From Ranitomeya imitator (taxonomy: Eukaryota), in contig NC_091282.1 of assembly GCF_032444005.1 (NCBI RefSeq), positions 665,198,001 to 665,262,000 of the forward strand: a stretch of 64,000 bases of DNA, in the 5' to 3' direction. This document shows positions 9,090 to 24,100 of the stretch, piece by piece. Position 1 is the stretch's first letter; each line of letters begins with the position of its first letter. Position numbers and translations under genes: made by a program. The notes under the pieces are model-generated. The model searched no databases, was not told the origin of the DNA, and saw only the letters and a list, made by a program, of their open reading frames with translations.

Positions 9090-9402
9090 TAGTGATGAGC
9101 GAGTATACTCGTTGCTCGAGATTTCCCGAGCATACTCGGGTGTCCGCCAAGTATTTTTTAGTGCTTGGAGCTTTAGTTTTCATCGCCACAGCTGAATGAT
9201 TTACATCTGTTAGCCAGCATAAGTACATGTGGGGGTTGCCTGGTTGCTAGGGGAATCCCCACATGTAATCAAGCTGGCTAACAGATGTAAATCATTCAGC
9301 TGCGGCAAAGAAAAACTAAATCTCCGAGCACTAAAAAATACTTGGAGGACACCCGAGCATGGTTGAGAAATCTCGAGTACCAAGTACACTCGTTCATCAC
9401 TA
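9090..9402. mobile_element. hAT-type MITE (TAGTGATGAGCG family)
   Basis: Long inverted arms TAGTGATGAGCGAG... / ...CTCGTTCATCACTA; same family as 36210-36517. No TSD found here. Confidence 0.75.
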
Positions 9403-10340
9403 ATAATTAATATTCCTTTCATTTCTTGGCTTTGGGTACACTAGAAGCACCTGCAAAATATTCAGCGGCTGAAGAATCTCAATCATTTTCAAACCAAGGA
9501 ATCTCAATCATAAAAGAATGTTGGAACTTCAGCTGAAGGATAAAGATCCAAAGGTCAGAAGGTTGACTGAATATCATTTTGCAGCTGATCTGGAGGTCTG
9601 AAGTTTTAGATAGTAGCCTGCAGTCTCGGTTCGTTAATGCTAGAAGTGGTGAGAGAAGAGAAGGGACAGATCTTTGTGTGGTTTGGGGGTTTGGTTTCTG
9701 ACCTTAATAAAAGTGTCACTCATTGTATCAGAACTAGTTGGATAGAGCTAAATTTTAGGATATGAACACAGGGCTGTGATCAGAGACTACAATAGAATAA
9801 TGCTACATGTATCATGGACCATGATAAAAAAAGGATCAGATAGAAAATGTGTGATGTACATGTTAGTAATAGGAAAAGTCCCTTGTTTAAGGTGAAGGTG
9901 ATGCCATGGATCACAAAGAGTCCACATCTAAGTACAAATATAAGTTCACCAACAACCTAAGAAGTCACAAAGGCCTTTTCAAGTGCCTCTTTTCTTTTCA
10001 TTGATGTATGTGAACTTGCCTCAGAACAACTTATGTATAATCAAGGTGAGATAGGTTTAGCACCGAATGTATTATTGGTACTTATCCAAAAACAAAGAAC
10101 GCACATATATGACCGCACAGCTGATAAATCCAACTCACCGACCAAACAGTGCAACACCAAGCAGGAAAAAATGGGCTGAACGTATCCTCCACACCAAATG
10201 AATCAGGGGTGCCGCTTCCAGAAACATATGCAGAGTCCAAAGTAGAAAAATAAGAAAAAATAGGAGCGCACTTACCCTGGTGTGGTATGCATCACTTTAT
10301 TGAAACATAGAAAGTGGACAGCAGGGAGGGGCAGGATCGG

Positions 10341-10392
10341 CCATGGACAACGGCCGTTTCGTGCTTACTGGCACTTCAACGGGTCCTAATGG
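10341..10392 (-). ncRNA. Variant minimal type I hammerhead ribozyme (left-arm copy)
   Basis: Exact reverse complement of 21129-21180. Confidence 0.6.
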
Positions 10393-10562
10393 TGAATGAG
10401 CTGGAGGAGTATTATATGGACCGGATCTAGTCTCAAACTCCTCCCCTCCAATGCTCAAACAAATATAATGTGAAAATTAAAAACAACATATAATTAAAAA
10501 CAGTAGACGTAGAACACAATCTAGAAAACTGAATACACAATTGGAAACAGACAGACTAATAT

Positions 10563-12491
10563 TTACAAAAATACCGACATGTCGACTTTTTCATTAAAAC
10601 CAGATGGTCCTGCCGCGTTAGCGCGCAGAATCCACCTGGCTTCTCTACGCAACAACAGACGACACAGATCTCCTCCTCCCTCTGGCAGCGAGACACGCTC
10701 TAAACCTGCAAACCTCAAAGATTGAACATCTCCCGCATGGTGAGTCCGAACATGATCTATCAACCTCGGGGCACCCTTCCCTGTTTTTATAGAATTAAAA
10801 TGCTCTCTAATGCGAATAAACAAGGGGCGGATGGTTTTGCCGATGTAGAAACCTCGGCAGGGGCAAAAAAGAATATATACGACGTGAGAGGTTTTACAAG
10901 ATATAAAGTCTCGTACCGTATGTTGTATATGGCCCACCCTCACTTGATCTCCTGTATGGTGATATTTGCAAAAGTTGCAACTCCCGCATTTGTAATTACC
11001 TGTGGGTGCGCTATCAGTAAGCCAATTATTTCTATCAGTCCTGAAACGGTTCCGGACTATAATATCTCTGATGTTTTTACTCCGACGACTAGCAAAAAGG
11101 GGGCCTCTTTCTACCACTTCTTTAAGATCGCTGTCCTGACTCAGGATCTGCCAATTTTTACGTATGACCGATCTAATGTGATTGTCAAGCGGTCCGAATT
11201 TGAAACTAAAGACAAACTTTTTTTCCGGTTTTATCCCCAAGGACATAGAAACATTGGTAGCCTTTGCTTTTTCATAAGCGGCATCCAACACTGAAGGGGG
11301 ATATCCTCGTTTTTTAAAACGATTAATTAATTCCACTGACTGCCGCTCAAATCCTTCAGACTCATTATTGATTCTTTTAACCCTAAGAATTTGACCAAAA
11401 GGAAGGGACCGTTTCACATAGGAGGGATGGGCACTATTAAAGTGTAATAGTGAATTAGACGCAGATGGTTTTCGATATACCTCTGTGGACAGACCTCTTT
11501 CGCTAGTGTACAATTTGACATCTAAAAACACCAAATTGGTGCCTCCGAATTGCGAGGTGAACCGCATATTCATGGTGTTGGATGTCCCCAGGTGCTCAAC
11601 AAAATCGTTGAAAACATCCTGGGGTCCATCCCACACCATGAATATGTCATCGACATATCTAGCATAAAGCTTGATATGCCGAAGAAAAGGGTTACTTGAG
11701 GAATAAATGTAATCCTCTTCAAACCTGGCAAGAAAGAGGTTGGCCAGGGTACATGCGACGGGGGTACCCATCGCGGTACCCACCGCCTGCAAGTACCACT
11801 GGCCATCGAACTGAAAAGCATTATGCTCAAGAATGAATGAGAGTCCCTCACAAATAAAATCAACCGTGTCTTGTCCAGTAGGCGTATTTTGTAAAATACG
11901 TCTGATTGTCTCCACTCCCAATGTTTGTGGTATGCGGGTGTACAGGCTTTCGATATCTATCGATGTTAAAGAATAAGAATCATGCCATTCAAAATCCTTC
12001 AGAATTTGTAAAAAAGCTCCCGTGTCTTTTATGTAGGAGGGAACATCCGACAAAAGGGGGCGTAATAGCCAGTCAATGTATGAAGAAAGCGGCTCAGTCA
12101 GGGAGCCCACCCCTGACACAATAGGACGGCCTGGGGGGGCTACAACCGACTTATGTAATTTAGGTATATGATACCAATGGGGACGCTTTGGGAATTTAGG
12201 AAAAAGCTTCTCAGCTTGTTTAGATGAAAAGACCCTTTTTTCCACGAAATGTCTTAAAAAAGAATGTAATAGATTTTTAAATTTTATAGTGGGGTCCCCT
12301 TTAAGTTTTACATACGTTTCTTCATCAGACAATTGTCTTAAAGCTTCTGTTTTATAGTAATCTCTCGACAGCAACACAACGTTACCTCCCTTATCCGCAT
12401 TACGGACAATCACATCAGACCAGTTTCGTATTTCAATTAAAGCTTGTTTTTCTTTTGTCAAGAGATTATCTAAAGGTTGTTTGTATATTAA
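10563..12491 (-). CDS. Penelope-like RT plus GIY-YIG endonuclease, left arm (N-terminally interrupted by the piggyBac-like insertion)
   Basis: ADKGG, SIDIESLY, GTAMGTP and YARYVDDIF RT motifs; CGSCNFC linker; VVYILFCPC.GFYIGKT..L..RIREH GIY-YIG. Translation is identical to the right arm. Confidence 0.93.
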   Translation of the reverse strand, partial: LIYKQPLDNLLTKEKQALIEIRNWSDVIVRNADKGGNVVLLSRDYYKTEALRQLSDEETYVKLKGDPTIKFKNLLHSFLRHFVEKRVFSSKQAEKLFPKFPKRPHWYHIPKLHKSVVAPPGRPIVSGVGSLTEPLSSYIDWLLRPLLSDVPSYIKDTGAFLQILKDFEWHDSYSLTSIDIESLYTRIPQTLGVETIRRILQNTPTGQDTVDFICEGLSFILEHNAFQFDGQWYLQAVGTAMGTPVACTLANLFLARFEEDYIYSSSNPFLRHIKLYARYVDDIFMVWDGPQDVFNDFVEHLGTSNTMNMRFTSQFGGTNLVFLDVKLYTSERGLSTEVYRKPSASNSLLHFNSAHPSYVKRSLPFGQILRVKRINNESEGFERQSVELINRFKKRGYPPSVLDAAYEKAKATNVSMSLGIKPEKKFVFSFKFGPLDNHIRSVIRKNWQILSQDSDLKEVVERGPLFASRRSKNIRDIIVRNRFRTDRNNWLTDSAPTGNYKCGSCNFCKYHHTGDQVRVGHIQHTVRDFISCKTSHVVYILFCPCRGFYIGKTIRPLFIRIREHFNSIKTGKGAPRLIDHVRTHHAGDVQSLRFAGLERVSLPEGGGDLCRLLLRREARWILRANAAGPSGFNEKVDMSVFL

Positions 12492-12919
12492 CCCCTTCAA
12501 GACCCAGCCTATTTTGACCTTAAAGACCTTGCCGTTTTTTGCAATTCTGACCAGTGTCCCTTTATGAGGTAATAACTCAGGAACGCTTCAACGGATCCTA
12601 GCGGTTCTGAGATTGTTTTTTCGTGACATATTGGGCTTCATGTTAGTGGTAAATTTAGGTCAATAAATTCTGCATTTATTTGTGATAAACACGGAAATTT
12701 GGCGAAAATTTTGAAAATTTCGCAATTTTCACATTTTGAATTTTTATTCTGTTAAACCAGAGAGATATGTGACACAAAATAGTTAATAAATAACATTTCC
12801 CACATGTTTACTTTACATCAGCACAATTTTGGAAACAAAATTTTTTTTTGTTAGGAAGTTATAAGGGTTAAAATTCGACCAGCGATTTGTCATTTTTACA
12901 ACGAAATTTACAAAACCAT

Positions 12920-15900
12920 TTTTTTTAGGGACCACCTCACATTTGAAGTCAGTTTGAGGGGTCTATTTGGCTGAAAATACCCAAAAGTGACACCATTCTA
13001 AAAACTGCACCCCTCAAGGTACTCAAAACCACATTCAAGAAGTTTATTAACCCTTCAGGTGCTTCACAGCAGCAGAAGCAACATGGAAGGAAAAAATGAA
13101 CATTTAACTTTTTAGTCACAAAAATTATCTTTTAGCAACAATTTTTTTTATTTTCCCAATGGTAAAAGGAGAAACTGAACCACGAAAGTTGTTGTCCAAT
13201 TTGTCCTGAGTACGCTGATACCTCATATGTGGGGGTAAACCACTGTTTTGGCGCACGGCAGGGCTTGGAAGGGAAGGAGCGCCATTTGACTTTTTGAATC
13301 AAAAATTGGCTCCACTCTTTAGCGGACACCATGTCACGTTTGGAGAGCCCCCGTGTGCCTAAAAATTGGAGCTCCCCCACAAGTGACCCCATTTTGGAAA
13401 CTAGACGCCCCAAGGAACTTATCTAGATGCATAGTGAGCACTTTGAACCCCCAGGTGCTTCACAAATTAATCCGTAAAAATGAAAAAGTACTTTTTTTTC
13501 ACAAAAAAATTCTTTTAACCTCAATTTTTTCATTTTCACATGGGCAACAGGATAAAATGGATCCTAAAATGTGTTGGGCAATTTCTCCTGAGTACACCAA
13601 TACCTCACATGTGGAGGTAAACCACTGTTTGGGCACATGGTAAGGCTCGGAAGGGAAGGAGCACCATTTGACTTTTTGAATGAAAAATTATTTCCATCGT
13701 TAGCGGACACCATGTCGCGTTTGGATAGCTCCTGTGTGCCTAAACATTGGCGCTCCCCCACAAGTGACCCCATTTTGGAAACTAGACCCCCCAAGGAACT
13801 AATTTAGATGCCTAGTGAGCACTTTAAACCCTCAGGTGCTTCACAAATTGATCTGTAAAAATGAAAAAGTAATTTTTTTTCACAAAAAAATTCTTTTCGC
13901 CTCAATTTTTTCATTTTCACATGGGCAGTAGGATAAAATGGATCATAAAATTTGTTGGGCAATTTCTCCCGAGTACGCCGATACCTCATATGTGGGGGTA
14001 AACCACTGTTTGGGCACTCGGCAGGGCTCGGAAGAGAAGGCGCGTCATTTGACTTTTTGAATGGAAAATTAGCTCCAATTGTTAGCGGACACCATGTCGC
14101 GTTTGGAGAGCCCCTGTGTGCCTAAACATTGGAGCTCCCGCACAAGTGACCCCATTTTGGAAACTAGACCCCCCAGGGAACTTATCTAGATGCATATTGA
14201 GCACTTTAAACCCCCAGGTGCTTCACAGAAGTTTATAACGCAGAGCCATGAAAATAAAAAATAATTTTTCTTTCCTCAAAAATGATTTTTTAGCCTGGAA
14301 TTTCCTATTTTGCCAAGGATAATAGGAGAAATTGGACCCCAAATATTGTTGTCCAGTTTGTCCTGAGTACGCTGATACCCCATATGTGGGGGTAAACCAC
14401 TGTTTGGGCGCACGGCAGGGCTCGGAAGGGATGGCACGCCATTTGGCTTTTTAAATGGAAAATTAGCTCCAATCATTAGCGGACACCATGTCACGTTTGG
14501 AGAGCCCCTGTGTGCCTAAACATTGGAGATCCCCCAGAAATGACACCATTTTAGAAACTAGACCCCCAAAGGAACTAATCTAGATGTGTGGTGAGGACTT
14601 TGAACCCCCAAGTGCTTCACAGAAGTTTATAACGCAGAGCCATGAAAATAAAAATAAAAATTATTTTCTCAAAAATGATCTTTTAGCCTGCAATTTTTTA
14701 TTTTCCCAAGGGTAACAGGAGAAATTTGACCCCAAAAGTTGTTGTCCAGTTTCTCCTGAGTACGCTGATACCCCATATGTGGGGGTAAATCACTGTTTGG
14801 GCACATGCCGGGGCTCGGAAGTGAAGTAGTGACGTTTTGAAATGCAGACTTTGATGGAATGCTCTGTGGGCGTCACGTTGCGTTTGCAGAGCCCCTGATG
14901 TGGCTTAACAGTAGAAACCCCCCACAAGTGACCCCATTTTGGAAACTAGACCCCCAAAGGAACTTATCTAGATGTGTGGTGAGCACTTTGAACCCCCAAG
15001 TGCTTCATAGAAGTTTATAATGCAGAGCCGTGAAAATAATAAATACGTTTTCTTTCCTCAAAAATAATTATTTAGCCCAGAATTTTTTAATTTTCCCAAG
15101 GGTAACAGGAGAAATTTGACCCCAATATTTGTTGTCCAGTTTCTCCTGAGTACGGTGATACCCCATATGTGGGGGTAAACTACTGTTTGGGCACATGCCG
15201 GGGCTTGGAATTGAAGTAGTGACGTTTTGAAATGCAGACTTTGATGGAATGCTCTGCGGGCGTCACGTTGCGTTTGCAGAGCCCCTGATGTGCCTAAACA
15301 GTAGAAACCCCCCACAAGTGACCCCATTTTGGAAACTAGACCCTGAAAGGAACTTATCTAGATGTGTGGTGAGCACTTTGAACCCCCAAGTGCTTCATAG
15401 AAGTTTATAATGCAGAGCCGTGAAAATAATAAATACGTTTTCTTTCCTCAAAAATAATTATTTAGCCCAGAATTTTTTATTTTCCCAAGGGTTACAGGAG
15501 AAATTGGACCCCAAAAGTTGTTGTCCAGTTTCTCCTGAGTACGCTGATACCCCATATGTGGGGGTAAACCACTGTTTGGGCACACGTCGGGGTTCAGAAG
15601 GGAAGTAGTGACTTTTGAAATGCAGACTTTGATGGAATGGTCTGCGGGTGTCACGTTGCGTTTGCAGAGCCCCTGGTGTGCCTAAACAGTAGAAACCCCC
15701 CACAAGTGACCCCATTTTAGAAACTAGACCCCCCAAGGAACTTATCTAGATATGTGGTGAGCACTTTGAACCCCCAAGTGCTTCACAGACGTTTACAACG
15801 CAGAGCCGTGAAAATAAAAAATCATTTTTCTTTCCTCAAAAATTATGTTTTAGCAAGCATTTTTTTAGATTCACAAGGGTAACAGGAGAAATTGGACCCC

Positions 15901-16095
15901 AGTAATTGTTGCGCAGTTTGTCCTGAGTATGCTGGTACCCCATATGTGGGGGTAAACCACTGTTTGGGCACACGTCAGGGCTCAGAAGTGAGGGAGCACC
16001 ATTTGACTTTTTGAATACGAGATTGGCTGGACTCAATGGTGGCGCCATGTTGCGTTTGGAGACCCCTGATGTGCCTAAACAGTGGTAACCCCTCA
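12920..16095. repeat. ~390-bp tandem repeat, about 8 diverged units, inside the piggyBac-like element
   Basis: Anchor ATGTGGGGGTAAA recurs near 13227, 13608, 13990, 14383, 14777, 15166, 15556 and 15944. Confidence 0.88.
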
Positions 16096-16099
16096 ATTC

Positions 16100-16255
16100 T
16101 AACTCCAACACTAACCCCAACACACCCCTAACCCTAATCCCAACTGTAGCCATAATCCTAATCACAACCCTAACCCCAACACACCCCTAACCACAACACT
16201 AACCCCAACACACCCCTAACCCTAACCACAACCCTAATTCCAACCCTAACCCTAA
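16100..16255. repeat. Degenerate telomere-like (CCCTAA)n tract
   Basis: CCCTAA, CCCCAA and CACTAA variants in tandem. Confidence 0.75.
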
Positions 16256-16599
16256 GGCTATGTGCCCACGTTGCGGATTCGTGTGAGATATTTCCGCACC
16301 ATTTTTGAAAAATCTGCGGGTAAAAGGCACTGTGTTTTACCTGCGGATTTTCCGCGGATTTCCAGTGTTTTTTGTGCGGATTTCACCTGCGGATTCCTAT
16401 TGAGGAACAGGTGTAAAACGCTGCGGAATCCGCACAAAGAATTGACATGCTGCGGAAAATACAACGCAGCGTTCCCGCGCGGTATTTTCCGCACCATGGG
16501 CACAGCGGATTTGGTTTTTCATATGTTTACATGGTACTGTAAACCTGATGGAACACTGCTGCGGATCCGCAGCCAAATCAGCACCGTGTGCACATAGCC
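16256..16599. mobile_element. Harbinger-type MITE nested in the telomere-like tract
   Basis: GGCTATGTGCCCAC / GTGCACATAGCC termini; TAA TSD at 16253-16255 and 16600-16602. Confidence 0.8.
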
Positions 16600-16608
16600 T
16601 AATTCTAA

Positions 16609-16939
16609 AGGTATGTGCACACGCTGCGGAAAACGCTGCGGATCCGCAGCAGTTTCCCATGAGTATACAGTTCAATGTAAACCTATGGGAAACAAAAATC
16701 GCTGTACACATGCTGCGGAAAAACTGCACGGAAACGCAGCGGTTTACATTCCGCAGCATGTCACTTCTTTGTGCGGATTCCGCAGCGGTTTTACAACTGC
16801 TCCAATAGAAAATCGCAATTGTAAAACCGCAGTGAAATGCGCAGAAAAAAACGCGGTAAATCCGCCATAAATCCGCAGCGGTTTAGCACTGCGGATTTAT
16901 CAAATCCGCAGCGGAAAAATCCGCAGAGGACCAGAATAC
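16609..16939. mobile_element. Second Harbinger-type MITE, running into the gap
   Basis: TAA then AGGTATGTGCACAC; same TGCGGA/TCCGCA internal motifs as its neighbour. Confidence 0.65.
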
Positions 16940-17117
16940 NNNNNNNNNNNNNNNNNNNNNNNNNNNNNNNNNNNNNNNNNNNNNNNNNNNNNNNNNNNNN
17001 NNNNNNNNNNNNNNNNNNNNNNNNNNNNNNNNNNNNNNNNNNNNNNNNNNNNNNNNNNNNNNNNNNNNNNNNNNNNNNNNNNNNNNNNNNNNNNNNNNNN
17101 NNNNNNNNNNNNNNNNN
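16940..17117. other. Assembly gap (178 N)
   Basis: Run of N. Confidence 1.
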
Positions 17118-17394
17118 GGAAAAAAAAAAATTTCTTTATTTTTTTATTGTCCCTACCTATGGGGGTGACAAAGGGGGGGGGTCATTTATTATTTTTTTTA
17201 TTTTGATCACTGAGATAGATTATATCTCAGTGATCAAAATGCACTTTGGAACGAATCTGCCGGCCGGCAGATTCGGCGGGCGCACTGCGCATGCGCCCGC
17301 CATTTTGGAAGATGGCGGCGCCCGGGAGAAGACGGACGGGACCACGGCTGGATCGGTAAGTATGATAGGGTGGGGGGGGTTCCACGGGGGGGGG

Positions 17395-17610
17395 GATCGG
17401 AGCACGGGGGGGGAATCGGAGCGCGGGAGGGGTGGAACGGAGCACGGGGGGCGTGGAACGGAGCACGGGGGGGCTGGAATGGAGCACGGGGGGGTGGAAC
17501 GGAGCACGGGGGGGGTGGATCGGAGTGCAGGGGGGGTGATTGGAGCATGGGGGGGGGTGATTGGAGCACGGGGGGAGCGGACACGAGCACGGGGGGGAGC
17601 GGAGCACTGG
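17395..17610. repeat. G-rich short tandem repeat (GGAGCACGGGGGG... units)
   Basis: About 10 degenerate ~20-bp units, each with a G run. Confidence 0.8.
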
Positions 17611-18133
17611 ACGGAGGGGAGCCGGAGCAGTGTACCGGCCAGATCGGGGGGGTGGGGGGGCGATCGGAGGGGTGGGGTGGGGGCACACTAGTATTTCCAG
17701 CCATGGCCGATGATATTGCAGCATCGGCCATGGCTGGATTGTAATATTTCACCCGTTATAATGGGTGAAATATTACAAATCGCTCTGATTGGCAGTTTCA
17801 CTTTCAACAGCCAATCAGAGCGATCGTAGCCACGAGGGGGTGAAGCCACCCCCCCTGGGCTAAACTACCACTCCCCCTGTCCCTGCAGATCGGGTGAAAT
17901 GGGAGTTAACCCTTTCACCCGGTCTGCAGGGACGCGATCTTTCCATGACGCCGCATAGGCGTCATGGGTCGGATTGGCACCGACTTTCATGACGCCTACG
18001 TGGCGTCAAAGGTCGGGAAGGGGTTAAGGCTTCTACATCTCTCAACACCTGCATCTGAAAAATATCGACAATGTTCCCTGGGGATATAGGGGGCATATAG
18101 GTAGACTTATTCCCCCCAGTAAAAGGTTGAACA

Positions 18134-18622
18134 CGCGTCGAGGGAGTAGGGGAAATGGCAGAAGGCAACGCGAAAAAAAGACGACAAGTCTCCTGGAAAC
18201 CGATGAAATAACAGTGGTCAATCTCACTCCGCGGATATTGAACGATACACATATATCGGTCCTAACCAAGGGACTCAATTTTTGTCTTCCAGAACGGTTC
18301 GATATAGTAGACTTTAAGATCGATTTATTTAAGGCGATACGCAAAATCCATCTACATAAATCTTTTTCCACAGCCAAAAGTAATCCAGTCCCTCGGGAAA
18401 TTTTTCCAGGAGAGTTACCCTGTCAGGTGGGTCCCCTTGGCTTTTTTGTCACTGAGGACCCATTTGACGAGGTACGGGAAGAGACACGAGATCTTATTGA
18501 TTCTTTGTACACTGTTCCACGGTCAATAATAGAGGAGGATACGGTTGTTCAACCTTTTACTGGGGGGAATAAGTCTACCTATATGCCCCCTATATCCCCA
18601 GGGAACATTGTCGATATTTTTC
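18134..18622 (+). CDS. Penelope-like ORF N-terminal segment (5'-truncated)
   Basis: VVNLT..L...H.SVL.KGLNFC....D...F.IDLFK.IRKIHL.K.F is the typical PLE N-terminal block; same frame as the downstream RT-EN ORF. Confidence 0.85.
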
Positions 18623-18923
18623 GGACCCACCTGACAGGGTAACTCTCCTGGAAAAATTTCCCGAGGGACTGGATTACTTTTGGCTGTGGAAAAAGATTTA
18701 TGTAGATGGATTTTGCGTATCGCCTTAAATAAATCGATCTTAAAGTCTACTATATCGAACCGTTCTGGAAGACAAAAATTGAGTCCCTTGGTTAGGACCG
18801 ATATATGTGTATCGTTCAATATCCGCGGAGTGAGATTGACCACTGTTATTTCATCGGTTTCCAGGAGACTTGTCGTCTTTTTTTCGCGTTGCCTTCTGCC
18901 ATTTCCCCTACTCCCTCGACGCG

Positions 18924-20958
18924 TGTTCAACCTTTTACTGGGGGGAATAAGTCTACCTATATGCCCCCTATATCCCCAGGGAACATTGTCGATATTTTTC
19001 AGATGCAGGTGTTGAGAGATGTAGAAGCCTTAATATACAAACAACCTTTAGATAATCTCTTGACAAAAGAAAAACAAGCTTTAATTGAAATACGAAACTG
19101 GTCTGATGTGATTGTCCGTAATGCGGATAAGGGAGGTAACGTTGTGTTGCTGTCGAGAGATTACTATAAAACAGAAGCTTTAAGACAATTGTCTGATGAA
19201 GAAACGTATGTAAAACTTAAAGGGGACCCCACTATAAAATTTAAAAATCTATTACATTCTTTTTTAAGACATTTCGTGGAAAAAAGGGTCTTTTCATCTA
19301 AACAAGCTGAGAAGCTTTTTCCTAAATTCCCAAAGCGTCCCCATTGGTATCATATACCTAAATTACATAAGTCGGTTGTAGCCCCCCCAGGCCGTCCTAT
19401 TGTGTCAGGGGTGGGCTCCCTGACTGAGCCGCTTTCTTCATACATTGACTGGCTATTACGCCCCCTTTTGTCGGATGTTCCCTCCTACATAAAAGACACG
19501 GGAGCTTTTTTACAAATTCTGAAGGATTTTGAATGGCATGATTCTTATTCTTTAACATCGATAGATATCGAAAGCCTGTACACCCGCATACCACAAACAT
19601 TGGGAGTGGAGACAATCAGACGTATTTTACAAAATACGCCTACTGGACAAGACACGGTTGATTTTATTTGTGAGGGACTCTCATTCATTCTTGAGCATAA
19701 TGCTTTTCAGTTCGATGGCCAGTGGTACTTGCAGGCGGTGGGTACCGCGATGGGTACCCCCGTCGCATGTACCCTGGCCAACCTCTTTCTTGCCAGGTTT
19801 GAAGAGGATTACATTTATTCCTCAAGTAACCCTTTTCTTCGGCATATCAAGCTTTATGCTAGATATGTCGATGACATATTCATGGTGTGGGATGGACCCC
19901 AGGATGTTTTCAACGATTTTGTTGAGCACCTGGGGACATCCAACACCATGAATATGCGGTTCACCTCGCAATTCGGAGGCACCAATTTGGTGTTTTTAGA
20001 TGTCAAATTGTACACTAGCGAAAGAGGTCTGTCCACAGAGGTATATCGAAAACCATCTGCGTCTAATTCACTATTACACTTTAATAGTGCCCATCCCTCC
20101 TATGTGAAACGGTCCCTTCCTTTTGGTCAAATTCTTAGGGTTAAAAGAATCAATAATGAGTCTGAAGGATTTGAGCGGCAGTCAGTGGAATTAATTAATC
20201 GTTTTAAAAAACGAGGATATCCCCCTTCAGTGTTGGATGCCGCTTATGAAAAAGCAAAGGCTACCAATGTTTCTATGTCCTTGGGGATAAAACCGGAAAA
20301 AAAGTTTGTCTTTAGTTTCAAATTCGGACCGCTTGACAATCACATTAGATCGGTCATACGTAAAAATTGGCAGATCCTGAGTCAGGACAGCGATCTTAAA
20401 GAAGTGGTAGAAAGAGGCCCCCTTTTTGCTAGTCGTCGGAGTAAAAACATCAGAGATATTATAGTCCGGAACCGTTTCAGGACTGATAGAAATAATTGGC
20501 TTACTGATAGCGCACCCACAGGTAATTACAAATGCGGGAGTTGCAACTTTTGCAAATATCACCATACAGGAGATCAAGTGAGGGTGGGCCATATACAACA
20601 TACGGTACGAGACTTTATATCTTGTAAAACCTCTCACGTCGTATATATTCTTTTTTGCCCCTGCCGAGGTTTCTACATCGGCAAAACCATCCGCCCCTTG
20701 TTTATTCGCATTAGAGAGCATTTTAATTCTATAAAAACAGGGAAGGGTGCCCCGAGGTTGATAGATCATGTTCGGACTCACCATGCGGGAGATGTTCAAT
20801 CTTTGAGGTTTGCAGGTTTAGAGCGTGTCTCGCTGCCAGAGGGAGGAGGAGATCTGTGTCGTCTGTTGTTGCGTAGAGAAGCCAGGTGGATTCTGCGCGC
20901 TAACGCGGCAGGACCATCTGGTTTTAATGAAAAAGTCGACATGTCGGTATTTTTGTAA
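18924..20958 (+). CDS. Penelope-like RT plus GIY-YIG endonuclease, right arm
   Basis: Uninterrupted frame with all the motifs listed for the left arm. The ORF-track start at 18805 lies in inverted sequence and is not the true start. Confidence 0.94.
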
Positions 20959-21128
20959 ATATTAGTCTGTCTGTTTCCAATTGTGTATTCAGTTTTCTAG
21001 ATTGTGTTCTACGTCTACTGTTTTTAATTATATGTTGTTTTTAATTTTCACATTATATTTGTTTGAGCATTGGAGGGGAGGAGTTTGAGACTAGATCCGG
21101 TCCATATAATACTCCTCCAGCTCATTCA

Positions 21129-21180
21129 CCATTAGGACCCGTTGAAGTGCCAGTAAGCACGAAACGGCCGTTGTCCATGG
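21129..21180 (+). ncRNA. Variant minimal type I hammerhead ribozyme in the PLE 3' UTR
   Basis: Helix I CCAT(TA)GGAC/GTCCATGG; core CCGTTGA-A; helix II GTGC-CAGTAA-GCAC; GAAA; helix III AC-GGCC-GT (palindromic); putative GUU cleavage triplet. Confidence 0.6.
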
Positions 21181-24100
21181 CCGATCCTGCCCCTCCCTGC
21201 TGTCCACTTTCTATGTTTCAATAAAGTGATGCATACCACACCAGGGTAAGTGCGCTCCTATTTTTTCTTATTTTTCTATTATTGGTACTTATCCTTTCCG
21301 CAAAGGTCATGCATGGTGTTGCCTTTTCTTTGCCAATGAGCATGAAGAACCACCAACCCAATGACAGGGAGCATGTCAAGGGTAGGAACCATGACTAAGG
21401 CAGGATATGTAAGGTCAGGAAAGAGCAAGATGCAACAGGGTTATCAACTAGTCCAAAACATACCGTTCTACAGTCAAATTGGTTCAGAGACGAAAACAGT
21501 TGAAATAAACTAATTTTGTGGTGCTGAAAACTAATCTGATCTATATATTCGCTGATTTGTTCTAATCTTCAAGATCCGGAGGAGGTTGTAATTAGTTATG
21601 ACACCTTTCATGCGGGCTTATAAATTGCATATTTATTATTTCAGCATCATTATTGCATTGTCAGAAGCTCGTCTATTGCATCATCTATTTAGTCTATTGA
21701 GCCTTCAGTATTCTATCATCTTAGGGGGGACCAATCAAAAAACGCCAACTTGGCTCTGATGGCGTAATCCTAATTACAGCTATATCACCTACTTTAATAA
21801 ATGATCTCTGTGTAAGGTATACAGTTTTAGGATTAGTACTTAGTACTAGACTTAGTACAGGGATGGATAATTAATTATTTTTTCTTCCAAGGGCAATTTG
21901 GATTTTTATACAATCCTTTGGGAGCCATACAAATTGTGCACTAACTCTGCCCACGAACTGTGTCCTGCCACTGGTGTCAGGACATAATCTTTCATTGTAT
22001 GTGACTCAGTAGTGAATACTGCATGCGCAGAGCAAGAAAAAATGTATGGGCCGAGAGCCATCAAAGTACATCTGCTCGCCCAAGCACTGCAATCTGCCCA
22101 ATGGCCACTTAAATGGTCATTGAGGGTCTATGCAGGAGTACAAGAGACAAGCAAAAAGGAGTCGTCACTGAATGAGGACTTCATTTTGTAGTGCAATTTC
22201 TGTAACTGTTTTCAATTCGCAATAGTGTTTAGACAGGTTTTACTTATTGGTGCTATGTTTCCTCTAAATATTAGAAAATTGGCATAGCAAAATATTCTGC
22301 TTCTTTATATTTGCAAAAATAATAGTGAAACTTTTATGCATTAATTATATGTAACAGTAAATGGAAAACTCTTTGATATCATAGAAACAAGAGCCAACTC
22401 AAATTATTCATTGTCAGATTTGAATTCAGGAGGTAGAAATCCTTAATAAATGGCTCATTTCATAACTGAACCTGACAACTTTTAAAAATATGTAATCCAG
22501 TGAAATCAGAAAAATATTAAACGGCCTTAAAAGTGCCAAAACTACAGTGAAAAAATAAAGGGCAAGACATTTCTTTTTGTATCTCAAAGATAAATGGATC
22601 GTCCTCCCACAATGGTACCCCAAGATTGGTAGGCTGGGCTTTGACGATGGAAGCCCATCTTTCTTGTGAACTAGTCCTGGATTATTAGAATCTAAAATAT
22701 TTTGAATTAGATTGACACTGATGGCTTACATCCGGATGTGGATTGTCCTATAGGTACATCCTTTGGCTTTAAGACCAGGACAAGGTCTACTGGTAACCAT
22801 GGTGGGTTTTTAAGATTGATCTCTTGATCACCGCAGATCAGTAAGCACCAAACTAATCATATCCTGACACAGCATTATTATCCATGCTGGTACAACAGCC
22901 AACTGGTTCCACAAACATATTTTTAAAGTGCTTTTTTTTTACTTCAATGTATGTATTTGGGTCTAAAAACCATTTCTACTATTGAGCTTCATTAAAAGTT
23001 TTGCACAGTTTGGCTTATTGTCCCCCTCCAAATTCAACTTTGAGGTGGTCTGTAGTCATAAGTCAGCTCAGAAAAAGACTAATAAAAGAGTTACGAACTT
23101 CCTGTCAGACTGACATAGTGCTGACTGACGGTTTTTCGTTAACTCATTCTGCAGCCAGCAATAGACAGTGCAACTCAGAAGCTATACGAGATGGAAGGTG
23201 CAAAATTTTTTAATAAACCCCAAGTGAAAAAAATATATTTTTAGCCCCAATTACATATAGTTAAGTAAAAAAAAATATATCAAAATGATCCGCTGGTGAA
23301 ATTAGTAACGGGGCAAATCCAGAACCAGTAGTGCCTGTAGCAGACAAATGGGTACAGATAACACCCTGTAAAGTGTGAGCTCATGATGTGCTCCCTTATT
23401 AAACTTTATTGGATAATCTTAAAGAATGCTGTAGAACATTAAAAGCGGAATTCGTATATTTGTTGCTAGGCAGCAATGTAAAATATTTTTAACCTCAGAG
23501 AAATTAGAACCATTTTTCTTGGCCCAACATTCTTTCACACAGGCCACATAACACACAGCAGCATTACATCCAGAATAGTTCCAGGAAACGTTGGACATGT
23601 CACAATTTTTCTACTGTAAAAAAGTTACCCATAAATTATTATTATTCTTTTTTAAGTTTGCTACCAGTCTGCTTCAGCTGTGGCCTGAGTAATCAGCATG
23701 CGATAATATACATGAATAATATCGAAGAAATTAGGACGTCACCGTTTCCTAAAAGTAAGAGTCCTGTATTCCATGTTTTCCGGGACACTTTGCGGTGTGC
23801 GGGAGAGGAGTGAACGACACAACGCTTCTATGGGTCAAGGACAATAGATAGGGTTGCTCTTTTTCCTGAATATTTATCAAGAAAATCATAAGGGGTGTAA
23901 ATATTATTATTTTATTTTAAGAGATTCCAAAATGAATTACATTTATTAACAGTTTCATGCGTTAAACCAAACAGTACTATAAAAGAGTTGAAAGGTCCAA
24001 ATATCACTAAACACCAATGACCCCCATGGGACTGACTCATTCATCGATAGCGGGGTTCTGGCCTCTATATGCAGCCTCTGCAATTAAGATAAAAGGTTAA

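What the first reader, a model, noticed from the sequence alone, without database searches (positions are those of the whole stretch)
10070..21294. Penelope-like element present as one head-to-head dimer with two RT-endonuclease frames and a single flanking duplication
Seen: the 2656-bp arms are reverse complements, their translations (including four antisense ORFs) are identical, and one 16-18 bp direct repeat brackets the whole 11.2-kb unit. The left arm has about 155 bp more 3' sequence. Known: PLEs often carry short inverted pLTR copies. Inference: both arms here keep nearly the whole RT plus GIY-YIG, and they entered in one very recent event, by priming from both target ends or by cDNA fold-back. 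Read-through would give kb-long dsRNA, so the locus could silence its own family.
Basis: partly seen in the sequence, partly recalled or inferred. Interest (0 to 1): 0.85.

Follow-up and report, generated by a model that had tools for sequence, protein, structure and literature searches.

The report
Young head-to-head Penelope retrotransposon dimer
This is a very recent insertion of a frog Penelope-like retrotransposon laid down as two mirror-image copies inside one target duplication, later split by a second transposon; the layout is real but is the usual one for this class of element.

Summary
Two 2656-bp arms are exact reverse complements and an 18-bp direct repeat brackets the unit. The left copy has 155 bp more 3' sequence.

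A 5.5-kb TTAA-flanked, piggyBac-like non-autonomous element splits it into 10243-12491 and 18024-18434. This element carries a satellite, a telomere-like array and the assembly gap. The gap therefore touches no Penelope frame. The exact rebuilding of the arm across it supports the scaffold join.

Each arm holds an uninterrupted RT plus GIY-YIG frame. The innermost 296 bp of each arm is the N-terminal coding piece in antisense. That piece stands forward only once, at the centre.

The best reading is one target-primed insertion using both ends of a staggered cut, with two reverse-transcription start sites 155 nt apart and strand switches at the centre. Head-to-head copies inside one duplication with a one-sided tail are the described Penelope layout. 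Extension of both target strands has been shown in vitro. This scan has noted many such dimers in this genome.

Reads neither confirmed nor refuted the centre. The silencing idea is untested.

Verdict: real, young, a new member of a known kind.

The parts
10070..10087 (.). Left copy of the 16-18-bp target-site duplication
   Evidence: Exact 18-mer found only here and at 21277-21294. The flanks beyond it are unrelated.
10088..10242 (-). 155-bp extra 3' tail (T) of the left copy
   Evidence: No partner in the right arm or elsewhere in the window. A cDNA contig of another ~99% copy runs from the arm straight into this sequence, with 30 of 30 loose letters matching. It is therefore normal family 3' sequence.
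10243..12491 (-). Outer part of the left arm: RT, GIY-YIG and 3' UTR
   Evidence: 100% reverse complement of 19030-21278. ORF 10563-12500(-).
12492..18023 (.). Later insertion: a non-autonomous TTAA-targeting (piggyBac-like) element. It carries a 388-bp satellite (13144-15988), a telomere-like array (16099-16255), the N gap (16940-17117) and a G-rich 21-bp minisatellite (17383-17629).
   Evidence: TTAA at 12488-12491 and 18024-18027, against a single TTAA at 19030-19033 in the right arm. The 13-nt ends match 11/13 in inverted orientation and the pattern occurs only at these two places. In four runs, contigs of many copies stop matching exactly behind 18027. Tandem arrays. No transposase-sized ORF.
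18024..18434 (-). Inner part of the left arm. It begins with the second TTAA copy.
   Evidence: 100% reverse complement of 18623-19033.
18134..18622 (+). The only forward copy of the N-terminal coding region (blocks N, S and Y'). It is open from 18127 and stops at 18640-18642.
   Evidence: Aligns to residues 5-145 of the 806-aa frog homologue P0001, E 7e-27. It overlaps the left arm's inner end.
18435..18622 (+). 188-bp unique centre of the palindrome (S plus Y')
   Evidence: Lies between the two arms. It holds a third copy of the 77-80-nt Y block.
18623..21278 (+). Right arm: inverted N piece (18623-18918), Y (18919-19003), RT, GIY-YIG and 3' UTR. It ends 155 nt short of the family 3' end.
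   Evidence: Homology to P0001 121-806 starts at residue 42 of ORF 18805-20958.
21277..21294 (.). Right copy of the target-site duplication

Best explanation
A Penelope-like retrotransposon of a frog (RT plus C-terminal GIY-YIG endonuclease) entered an AT-rich site in a single target-primed event.

1. The endonuclease made a staggered cut that left 16-18-nt 3' overhangs.
2. Both 3' ends served as primers for reverse transcription of element RNA. One started at the family's 3' end and the other 155 nt further in. Both copies therefore have their 3' ends outward, against the duplicated target, and their 5' ends facing each other.
3. The two growing cDNAs have the same sense and cannot simply anneal. 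They were joined by strand switches, which left the N-terminal coding piece forward once at the centre and inverted in each arm. The junctions are at 18133/18134, its mirror 18918/18919, and 18622/18623.
4. Soon afterwards a very abundant TTAA-targeting non-autonomous DNA transposon landed in the left arm.

Shown: the anatomy, the identity of the element, the target duplication, the nested insertion and the family 3' end.

Inferred: the use of both target ends, and the order and nature of the switches.
For: Arms and insert:
- The arms match at 2656/2656 positions once the insert is removed.
- The TTAA duplication, the single TTAA in the right arm (an internal empty site) and the matching termini show one later insertion. 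They also tie the two sides of the gap together.
- Copies of the insert family end exactly at 18027 in four runs.

Target duplication and orientation:
- A unique 18-mer sits exactly at both outer ends, with unrelated flanks.
- Both copies have their 3' ends outward.

Element identity and order of blocks:
- Homology to full-length frog PLE proteins gives the normal order N-S-Y-Z.
- GIY-YIG is identified by alignment.

Family 3' end:
- A cDNA contig from another sample, 19 differences in about 2 kb, continues from the arm into the 155-bp tail. The right arm therefore starts internally.

Literature:
- A purified PLE protein cleaves and extends both target strands and starts RT at internal sites. 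The 'tail' is the stretch between two start sites (PMC11167929).
- Inverted 5'-truncated copies within one TSD are typical of PLEs (PMC8557442, PMC3846280).
Against: - No read or contig shown bridges the centre, the 21278 junction or the whole unit. The contigs available are short, and the one read-laying run is spent.
- The mirrored junction at 18133/18134 and 18918/18919 cannot arise independently in two cDNAs copied from normal RNA. It needs an extra switch with a homology-guided return through the Y block, or an already rearranged template RNA.
- The 155-bp difference is far longer than the 30-40-bp tail described for other PLEs.
- 100% arm identity could be partly an assembly or polishing effect.
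Confidence: 0.65

Rival explanations
1. Single priming plus self-priming. Only the left target end primed reverse transcription. The 3' end of that cDNA folded back on itself at 18434/18435 and copied its own strand outward, making the second arm. It left the template 155 nt before its end and was joined to the right target end through the shared TA.
For: - It explains at once why the odd junction 18133/18134 is mirrored exactly at 18918/18919, and why the arms are 100% identical.
- The copied arm is the shorter one, as this model requires.
- Self-priming has been proposed for head-to-head PLE structures (PMC3846280).
Against: - The primary strand already holds a sense-oriented N-S-Y block after antisense sequence. 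Fold-back alone does not explain that without a second cDNA or a rearranged template.
- There is no microhomology at 18622/18623.
- In vitro the enzyme does extend both strands.
Confidence: 0.22
2. Two generations. The template RNA came from a source copy whose 5' part was already inverted by a twin-priming-type event, giving the order antisense Y-S-N followed by Y-Z-T. Only the junction at 18622/18623 was made in this insertion.
For: - It needs one new junction per event.
- The 77-nt Y duplication at an inversion point is the signature known from L1 twin priming (own knowledge; PMC2837659 is listed but was not read).
- The inverted N piece supplies an ATG in frame with RT.
Against: - Words across 18918/18919 were found only in the run from the sample that probably gave the assembly, 1 of 2 sampled words. 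They were absent from other samples, other species and the cDNA runs.
- The cDNA contigs do not cover this region.
- This is a sub-model of the main explanation, not an alternative to a single insertion.
Confidence: 0.2
3. Post-insertion DNA event or assembly artefact. Either a single copy was later turned into a palindrome by break repair or a replication fold-back, or the palindrome comes from chimeric fold-back reads or a wrong scaffold join.
For: - Perfect palindromes are a known long-read artefact.
- The palindrome centre lies only 1.4 kb from a contig end, at the gap.
- No bridging read could be shown.
Against: - An artefact would mirror everything up to the contig end. Here one arm carries a TTAA-duplicated insertion that the other lacks, and the flanks differ.
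- The arms stop exactly at a direct 18-bp repeat.
- Each contig on its own shows part of the structure, and the two parts fit to the base.
- A later DNA-level duplication would have to end precisely at the second TSD copy.
Confidence: 0.07

Closest known systems
Canonical EN+ Penelope-like elements of vertebrates (Penelope/Poseidon and Neptune type; e.g. PAc of Anolis carolinensis, PMC11167929)
   Same: Single ORF with an N-terminal region, an RT and a cysteine/histidine linker followed by a C-terminal GIY-YIG. AT-rich target. Variable TSD. An inverted copy at the 5' end. Extra 3' sequence on one side only. Both target strands usable as primers in vitro.
   Different: - No pseudo-LTR or partial tandem at this locus.
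- No Rfam hammerhead.
- Both arms are kb-long and coding, where a short inverted pLTR is more usual.
- The one-sided extra sequence is 155 bp, not 30-40 bp.
- The clade within PLEs was not determined.
Adineta vaga Pen2a/Pen3 inverted-repeat insertions (PMC3846280)
   Same: Head-to-head inverted structures flanked by one 8-10-bp TSD, interpreted as products of one event with self-priming. Parts of the element occur in permuted and inverted order.
   Different: Those have short inverted pLTRs with palindromes at the junction. Here the arms are 2.6 kb, the centre is a 188-bp unique loop and the TSD is 16-18 bp.
L1 twin-priming inversions
   Same: Both ends of the staggered target cut prime reverse transcription. 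The product sits inside one TSD. There is a small duplication at the inversion point.
   Different: Twin priming uses one RNA and yields an inverted 5' part without duplicating the body. Here nearly the whole element is present twice.
TTAA-targeting non-autonomous DNA transposons of frogs that carry tandem repeats (piggyBac-like elements; compare the Kolobok T2-MITE Xmix with its Xstir repeats, PMC6004289)
   Same: TTAA duplication, short terminal inverted repeats, very high copy number and an internal satellite riding on the element.
   Different: The termini read CCCC...GGGG. This fits piggyBac-type ends (own knowledge) and not the AGGRR ends given for Kolobok/T2. There is no transposase in this copy.

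Membership tests
Penelope-like element (EN+) | PLE-type reverse transcriptase | tested here: met
   RVT_1 hit at E 1e-4, below Pfam's cut-off. 48% identity over 688 residues to a full-length frog protein, and 567 relatives at E<=1e-10 that carry RT families. A YVDD motif is present.
Penelope-like element (EN+) | C-terminal GIY-YIG endonuclease preceded by a Cys/His motif | tested here: met
   No direct Pfam hit. The last 167 residues align (39% identity, E 6e-34) to residues 603-761 of P0008, which include the stretch of P0008 that Pfam scores as GIY-YIG, 655-745. The CxxCxxC..HH motif and the YI..YIGKT motif are seen.
Penelope-like element (EN+) | Pseudo-LTR / partial tandem | tested here: not met
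   No direct repeat between the 3' UTR plus tail and the 5' region. The best local score is no better than shuffles. Both copies lack an upstream pLTR at this locus.
Penelope-like element (EN+) | Hammerhead ribozyme in the pLTR | tested here: inconclusive
No hammerhead family at E<=1 in 9500-22000. It was not tested further.
Penelope-like element (EN+) | Inverted 5'-truncated copy, one TSD round the whole unit, one-sided extension | tested here: met
   The layout is as described in PMC8557442 and PMC3846280.
piggyBac-like non-autonomous transposon (the insert) | TTAA target duplication | tested here: met
   TTAA on both sides of the insert and a single TTAA at the same place in the other arm.
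piggyBac-like non-autonomous transposon (the insert) | Short terminal inverted repeats starting CCC / ending GGG | tested here: met
   The 13-nt ends match 11/13. The pattern is found only at these two sites in the window.
piggyBac-like non-autonomous transposon (the insert) | Transposase (for an autonomous member) | tested here: not met
   No long ORF apart from repeat-derived ORFs and ORFs that span the gap. The insert is therefore non-autonomous. Part of it is hidden by the gap.

The most novel reading that the evidence does not exclude
Read-through transcription across the 2.6-kb perfect inverted arms makes a long hairpin RNA. The locus would then act as a natural silencer (small-RNA source) of its own, still transcribed, Penelope family. 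That would be a vertebrate counterpart of inverted-repeat 'killer' loci.
Probability: 0.1. Interest if true: 0.65.

Novelty: new member of a known kind. Interest (0 to 1): 0.3.

Why it matters
How Penelope-like elements build their tandem and inverted structures is still open (PMC8557442), and the first in vitro data date from 2024. This locus is a pristine natural product:
- zero substitutions between the arms;
- both target junctions intact;
- two different cDNA start points;
- a readable central joint.

On its own it is one more example of a known layout. This scan notes many such young dimers in the same frog genome. Taken together they would allow a direct count of start sites and joint types, which could separate two-ended priming from self-priming. 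The locus also shows that an abundant satellite-carrying TTAA element has been active very recently. In addition, the nested insertion independently validates a scaffold join across an assembly gap.

Tried and rejected
- Rfam scan for hammerheads: nothing, only chance microRNA-like hairpins in the insert.
- Direct Pfam hit for GIY-YIG or for the N-terminal region: none. Settled by alignment to a homologue instead.
- Other copies of the Penelope element, the tail or the insert ends in the window: none.
- Paralogous copy of the uninterrupted target site in the window: none.
- Pseudo-LTR search: negative.
- Read laying on 17700-22000: only short Logan contigs. No listed piece bridges the centre or the right junction, and no joint is reported inside the Penelope part. 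It neither supports nor refutes the palindrome.
- Run search with 60 nt across 18918/18919: only 2 sampled words, too weak to decide whether the junction exists elsewhere.
- Look-up of earlier notes by sequence: blank.
- Two independent insertions: rejected, because the arms are identical, the 18-mer is shared, and the 3' ends of the two copies face outward against the two copies of it.
- Kolobok identity for the insert: set aside, because its ends do not start with the AGGRR/AG motif.
Full report
**The gap first**

The window has a single N run, 16940-17117, 178 letters of estimated length. It does not lie in either Penelope arm or in any Penelope frame. It lies inside a 5.5-kb block (12492-18023) that separates two pieces of the left arm. 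The letters on its two sides are unrelated repeats. On the left is a palindrome-rich stretch. On the right is an A/T run followed by a G-rich 21-bp minisatellite. The only ORF across it (16837-17691) is an effect of N being read as X.

Continuity across the gap cannot be read directly, but three facts tie the two contigs together:
- The block is bounded by TTAA on both sides (12488-12491 and 18024-18027).
- Its two ends carry a 13-nt inverted repeat (11/13) that occurs nowhere else in the window.
- When the block and one TTAA are removed in a script, the left arm becomes the exact reverse complement of the right arm, 2656 of 2656 positions.

All lengths that include the gap (11.2 kb, 5.5 kb) are estimates.

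**The observation**

The repeat finder gives two perfect inverted pairs: 10243-12491 with 19030-21278 (2249 nt), and 18024-18434 with 18623-19033 (411 nt). They overlap by the TTAA.

The 18-mer at 10070-10087 recurs at 21277-21294 in direct orientation. It occurs nowhere else even with two mismatches, and none is expected by chance. The sequences beyond it on either side are unrelated. Its first two letters (TA) are also the last two of the arm, so the duplication is 16-18 bp.

The 155 bp at 10088-10242 have no partner.

**What the element is**

The 717-aa frame of the right arm has:
- a weak RVT_1 hit;
- a YVDD motif;
- a Cys/His cluster followed by a YI..YIGKT motif;
- 567 relatives at E<=1e-10, the best from frogs.

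It is 48% identical over 688 residues to an 806-aa protein of Dendropsophus. Its last 167 residues align to residues 603-761 of P0008, which include the stretch of P0008 that Pfam scores as GIY-YIG. It is therefore an endonuclease-bearing Penelope-like element of an anuran.

There is no Rfam hammerhead and no pseudo-LTR-type direct repeat at this locus.

**The centre is rearranged**

A second plus-strand frame (18127-18642) aligns to residues 5-145 of the same homologue. The 717-aa frame aligns only from its residue 42, to residues 121-806. The normal order of blocks is therefore:
- N: 18134-18434
- S: 18435-18540
- Y: a 77-80-nt block
- Z: 19004-21278
- T: the tail

On the plus strand the locus reads: antisense T, antisense Z, antisense Y, then N, S, Y forward, then antisense N, then Y and Z forward.

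Three consequences follow:
- The first 41 codons of the 717-aa frame are antisense of N and are not Penelope coding.
- The N-terminal ~120 residues are encoded once only, at the centre. That frame runs into a stop at 18640-18642.
- The one ATG near its start (18155) is in another frame.

There are only two kinds of non-collinear joints: 18133/18134 with its exact mirror 18918/18919, and 18622/18623. Neither shows clear microhomology.

**The insert**

The right arm has a single TTAA at 19030-19033 and serves as the empty site. The insert has no transposase-sized ORF. It carries a 388-bp satellite (7.3 copies), a telomere-like array and a G-rich minisatellite.

Laying public contigs on 17700-22000 shows very large word depth on its right end. 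In four runs, contigs of many copies stop resembling each other exactly behind 18027, which is the element end plus TTAA.

The ends read CCCC...GGGG. That fits piggyBac-type termini (own knowledge), not the AGGRR ends of the Kolobok T2 elements of Xenopus. Other notes of this scan describe a TTAA family with a ~390-bp satellite and telomere-like DNA elsewhere in this genome (s1-271819, s1-288300). These are unchecked leads that fit.

**What the reads add**

Runs X11 and X12 are cDNA, since a SMART oligo and Illumina adapters appear as loose ends. A 2091-nt contig (depth 213) lies on 19304-21285 with 19 differences and then continues for 85 nt. Its first 30 loose letters are identical to the tail T read in sense.

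This gives three conclusions:
- The family is transcribed.
- The assembled transcript comes from another copy.
- Z-T is the normal 3' sequence, so the right arm begins 155 nt inside it.

Diverged copies (95-97%) of N and S exist in the DNA run X1, and a second species label holds ~99% pieces.

No listed contig bridges the centre or the right junction, and no joints are reported inside the Penelope part. The reads therefore neither confirm nor refute the palindrome. A 60-nt query across 18918/18919 had only two sampled words. One was held by X1, probably the assembly's own sample, and none by any other run.

**Why it is not an artefact**

A fold-back read would mirror everything up to the contig end. 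Here:
- one arm carries a TTAA-duplicated insertion that the other lacks;
- the outer flanks differ;
- the arms stop exactly at a direct 18-bp repeat.

Each contig shows part of the structure and the parts fit to the base. I put the artefact and post-insertion readings at about 7% together.

**Mechanism**

Both copies have their 3' ends outward, each against one copy of the duplicated target. This is what results if both 3' overhangs of a staggered cut prime reverse transcription.

Purified PAc protein cleaves and extends both target strands. It starts reverse transcription at internal sites, and the 'tail' of genomic copies is the stretch between two start sites (PMC11167929). The 155-nt asymmetry fits that logic, though it is longer.

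Two cDNAs of the same sense cannot anneal. They must be joined by a jump of one 3' end onto the other.
- A jump from the start of Y onto the 3' end of a full-length cDNA gives the joint 18133/18134.
- A further switch at 18622/18623 onto the strand's own N, with return through the 77-nt Y homology, gives the inverted N and the mirrored joint.

The alternatives are self-priming of a single cDNA (PMC3846280) or an RNA from an already 5'-inverted source copy. The sequence alone does not separate them. A census of the family would.

**Comparison and novelty**

The following are the published description of PLE insertions (PMC8557442, PMC3846280):
- an inverted 5'-truncated copy next to the 5' end;
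- head-to-head as the commonest form;
- a single TSD round the unit;
- an extension at one end only.

This scan lists 37 notes on inverted Penelope structures in this same genome. One follow-up reached the same verdict on a 9.5-kb dimer (s1-279619).

The locus is a clean, very young, long-armed example with a nested insertion. It is not a new kind of thing. The silencing idea remains possible but untested: the two cDNA libraries have no coverage at 18132-19283.

Noticed in passing
window 19304: In two cDNA runs from different samples, the contigs of a ~99% copy of the element both start at 19304, directly after a SMART template-switch oligo. There is no genomic GGG upstream. This suggests a discrete RNA 5' end inside the ORF.
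   Followed up: partly
window 17696-18008: The right end of the TTAA insert is a chain of about six short perfect or near-perfect hairpins. Its word depth is orders of magnitude above the flank in DNA runs and is also high in cDNA runs.
   Followed up: partly
   Followed up: partly
window 18155: The only ATG near the 5' end of the forward N-terminal region is in a different frame from the long N-terminal ORF. The two frames overlap around a run of A.
   Followed up: no
window 9090-9402: Nested inverted repeats (91-nt and 64-nt arms, 87-88% complementary) lie just left of the insertion site. They may be a small foldback or MITE-like element.
   Followed up: no
window 19212-21276 (run X3): A run labelled as a different species holds pieces of this Penelope family at about 99% identity. 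The species may be very close relatives, or the family may have been active or transferred recently in both.
   Followed up: no
window 16099-16255 and 17383-17629: Inside the insert there is a degenerate CCCTAA-like array and a G-rich 21-bp minisatellite on either side of the assembly gap.
   Followed up: partly
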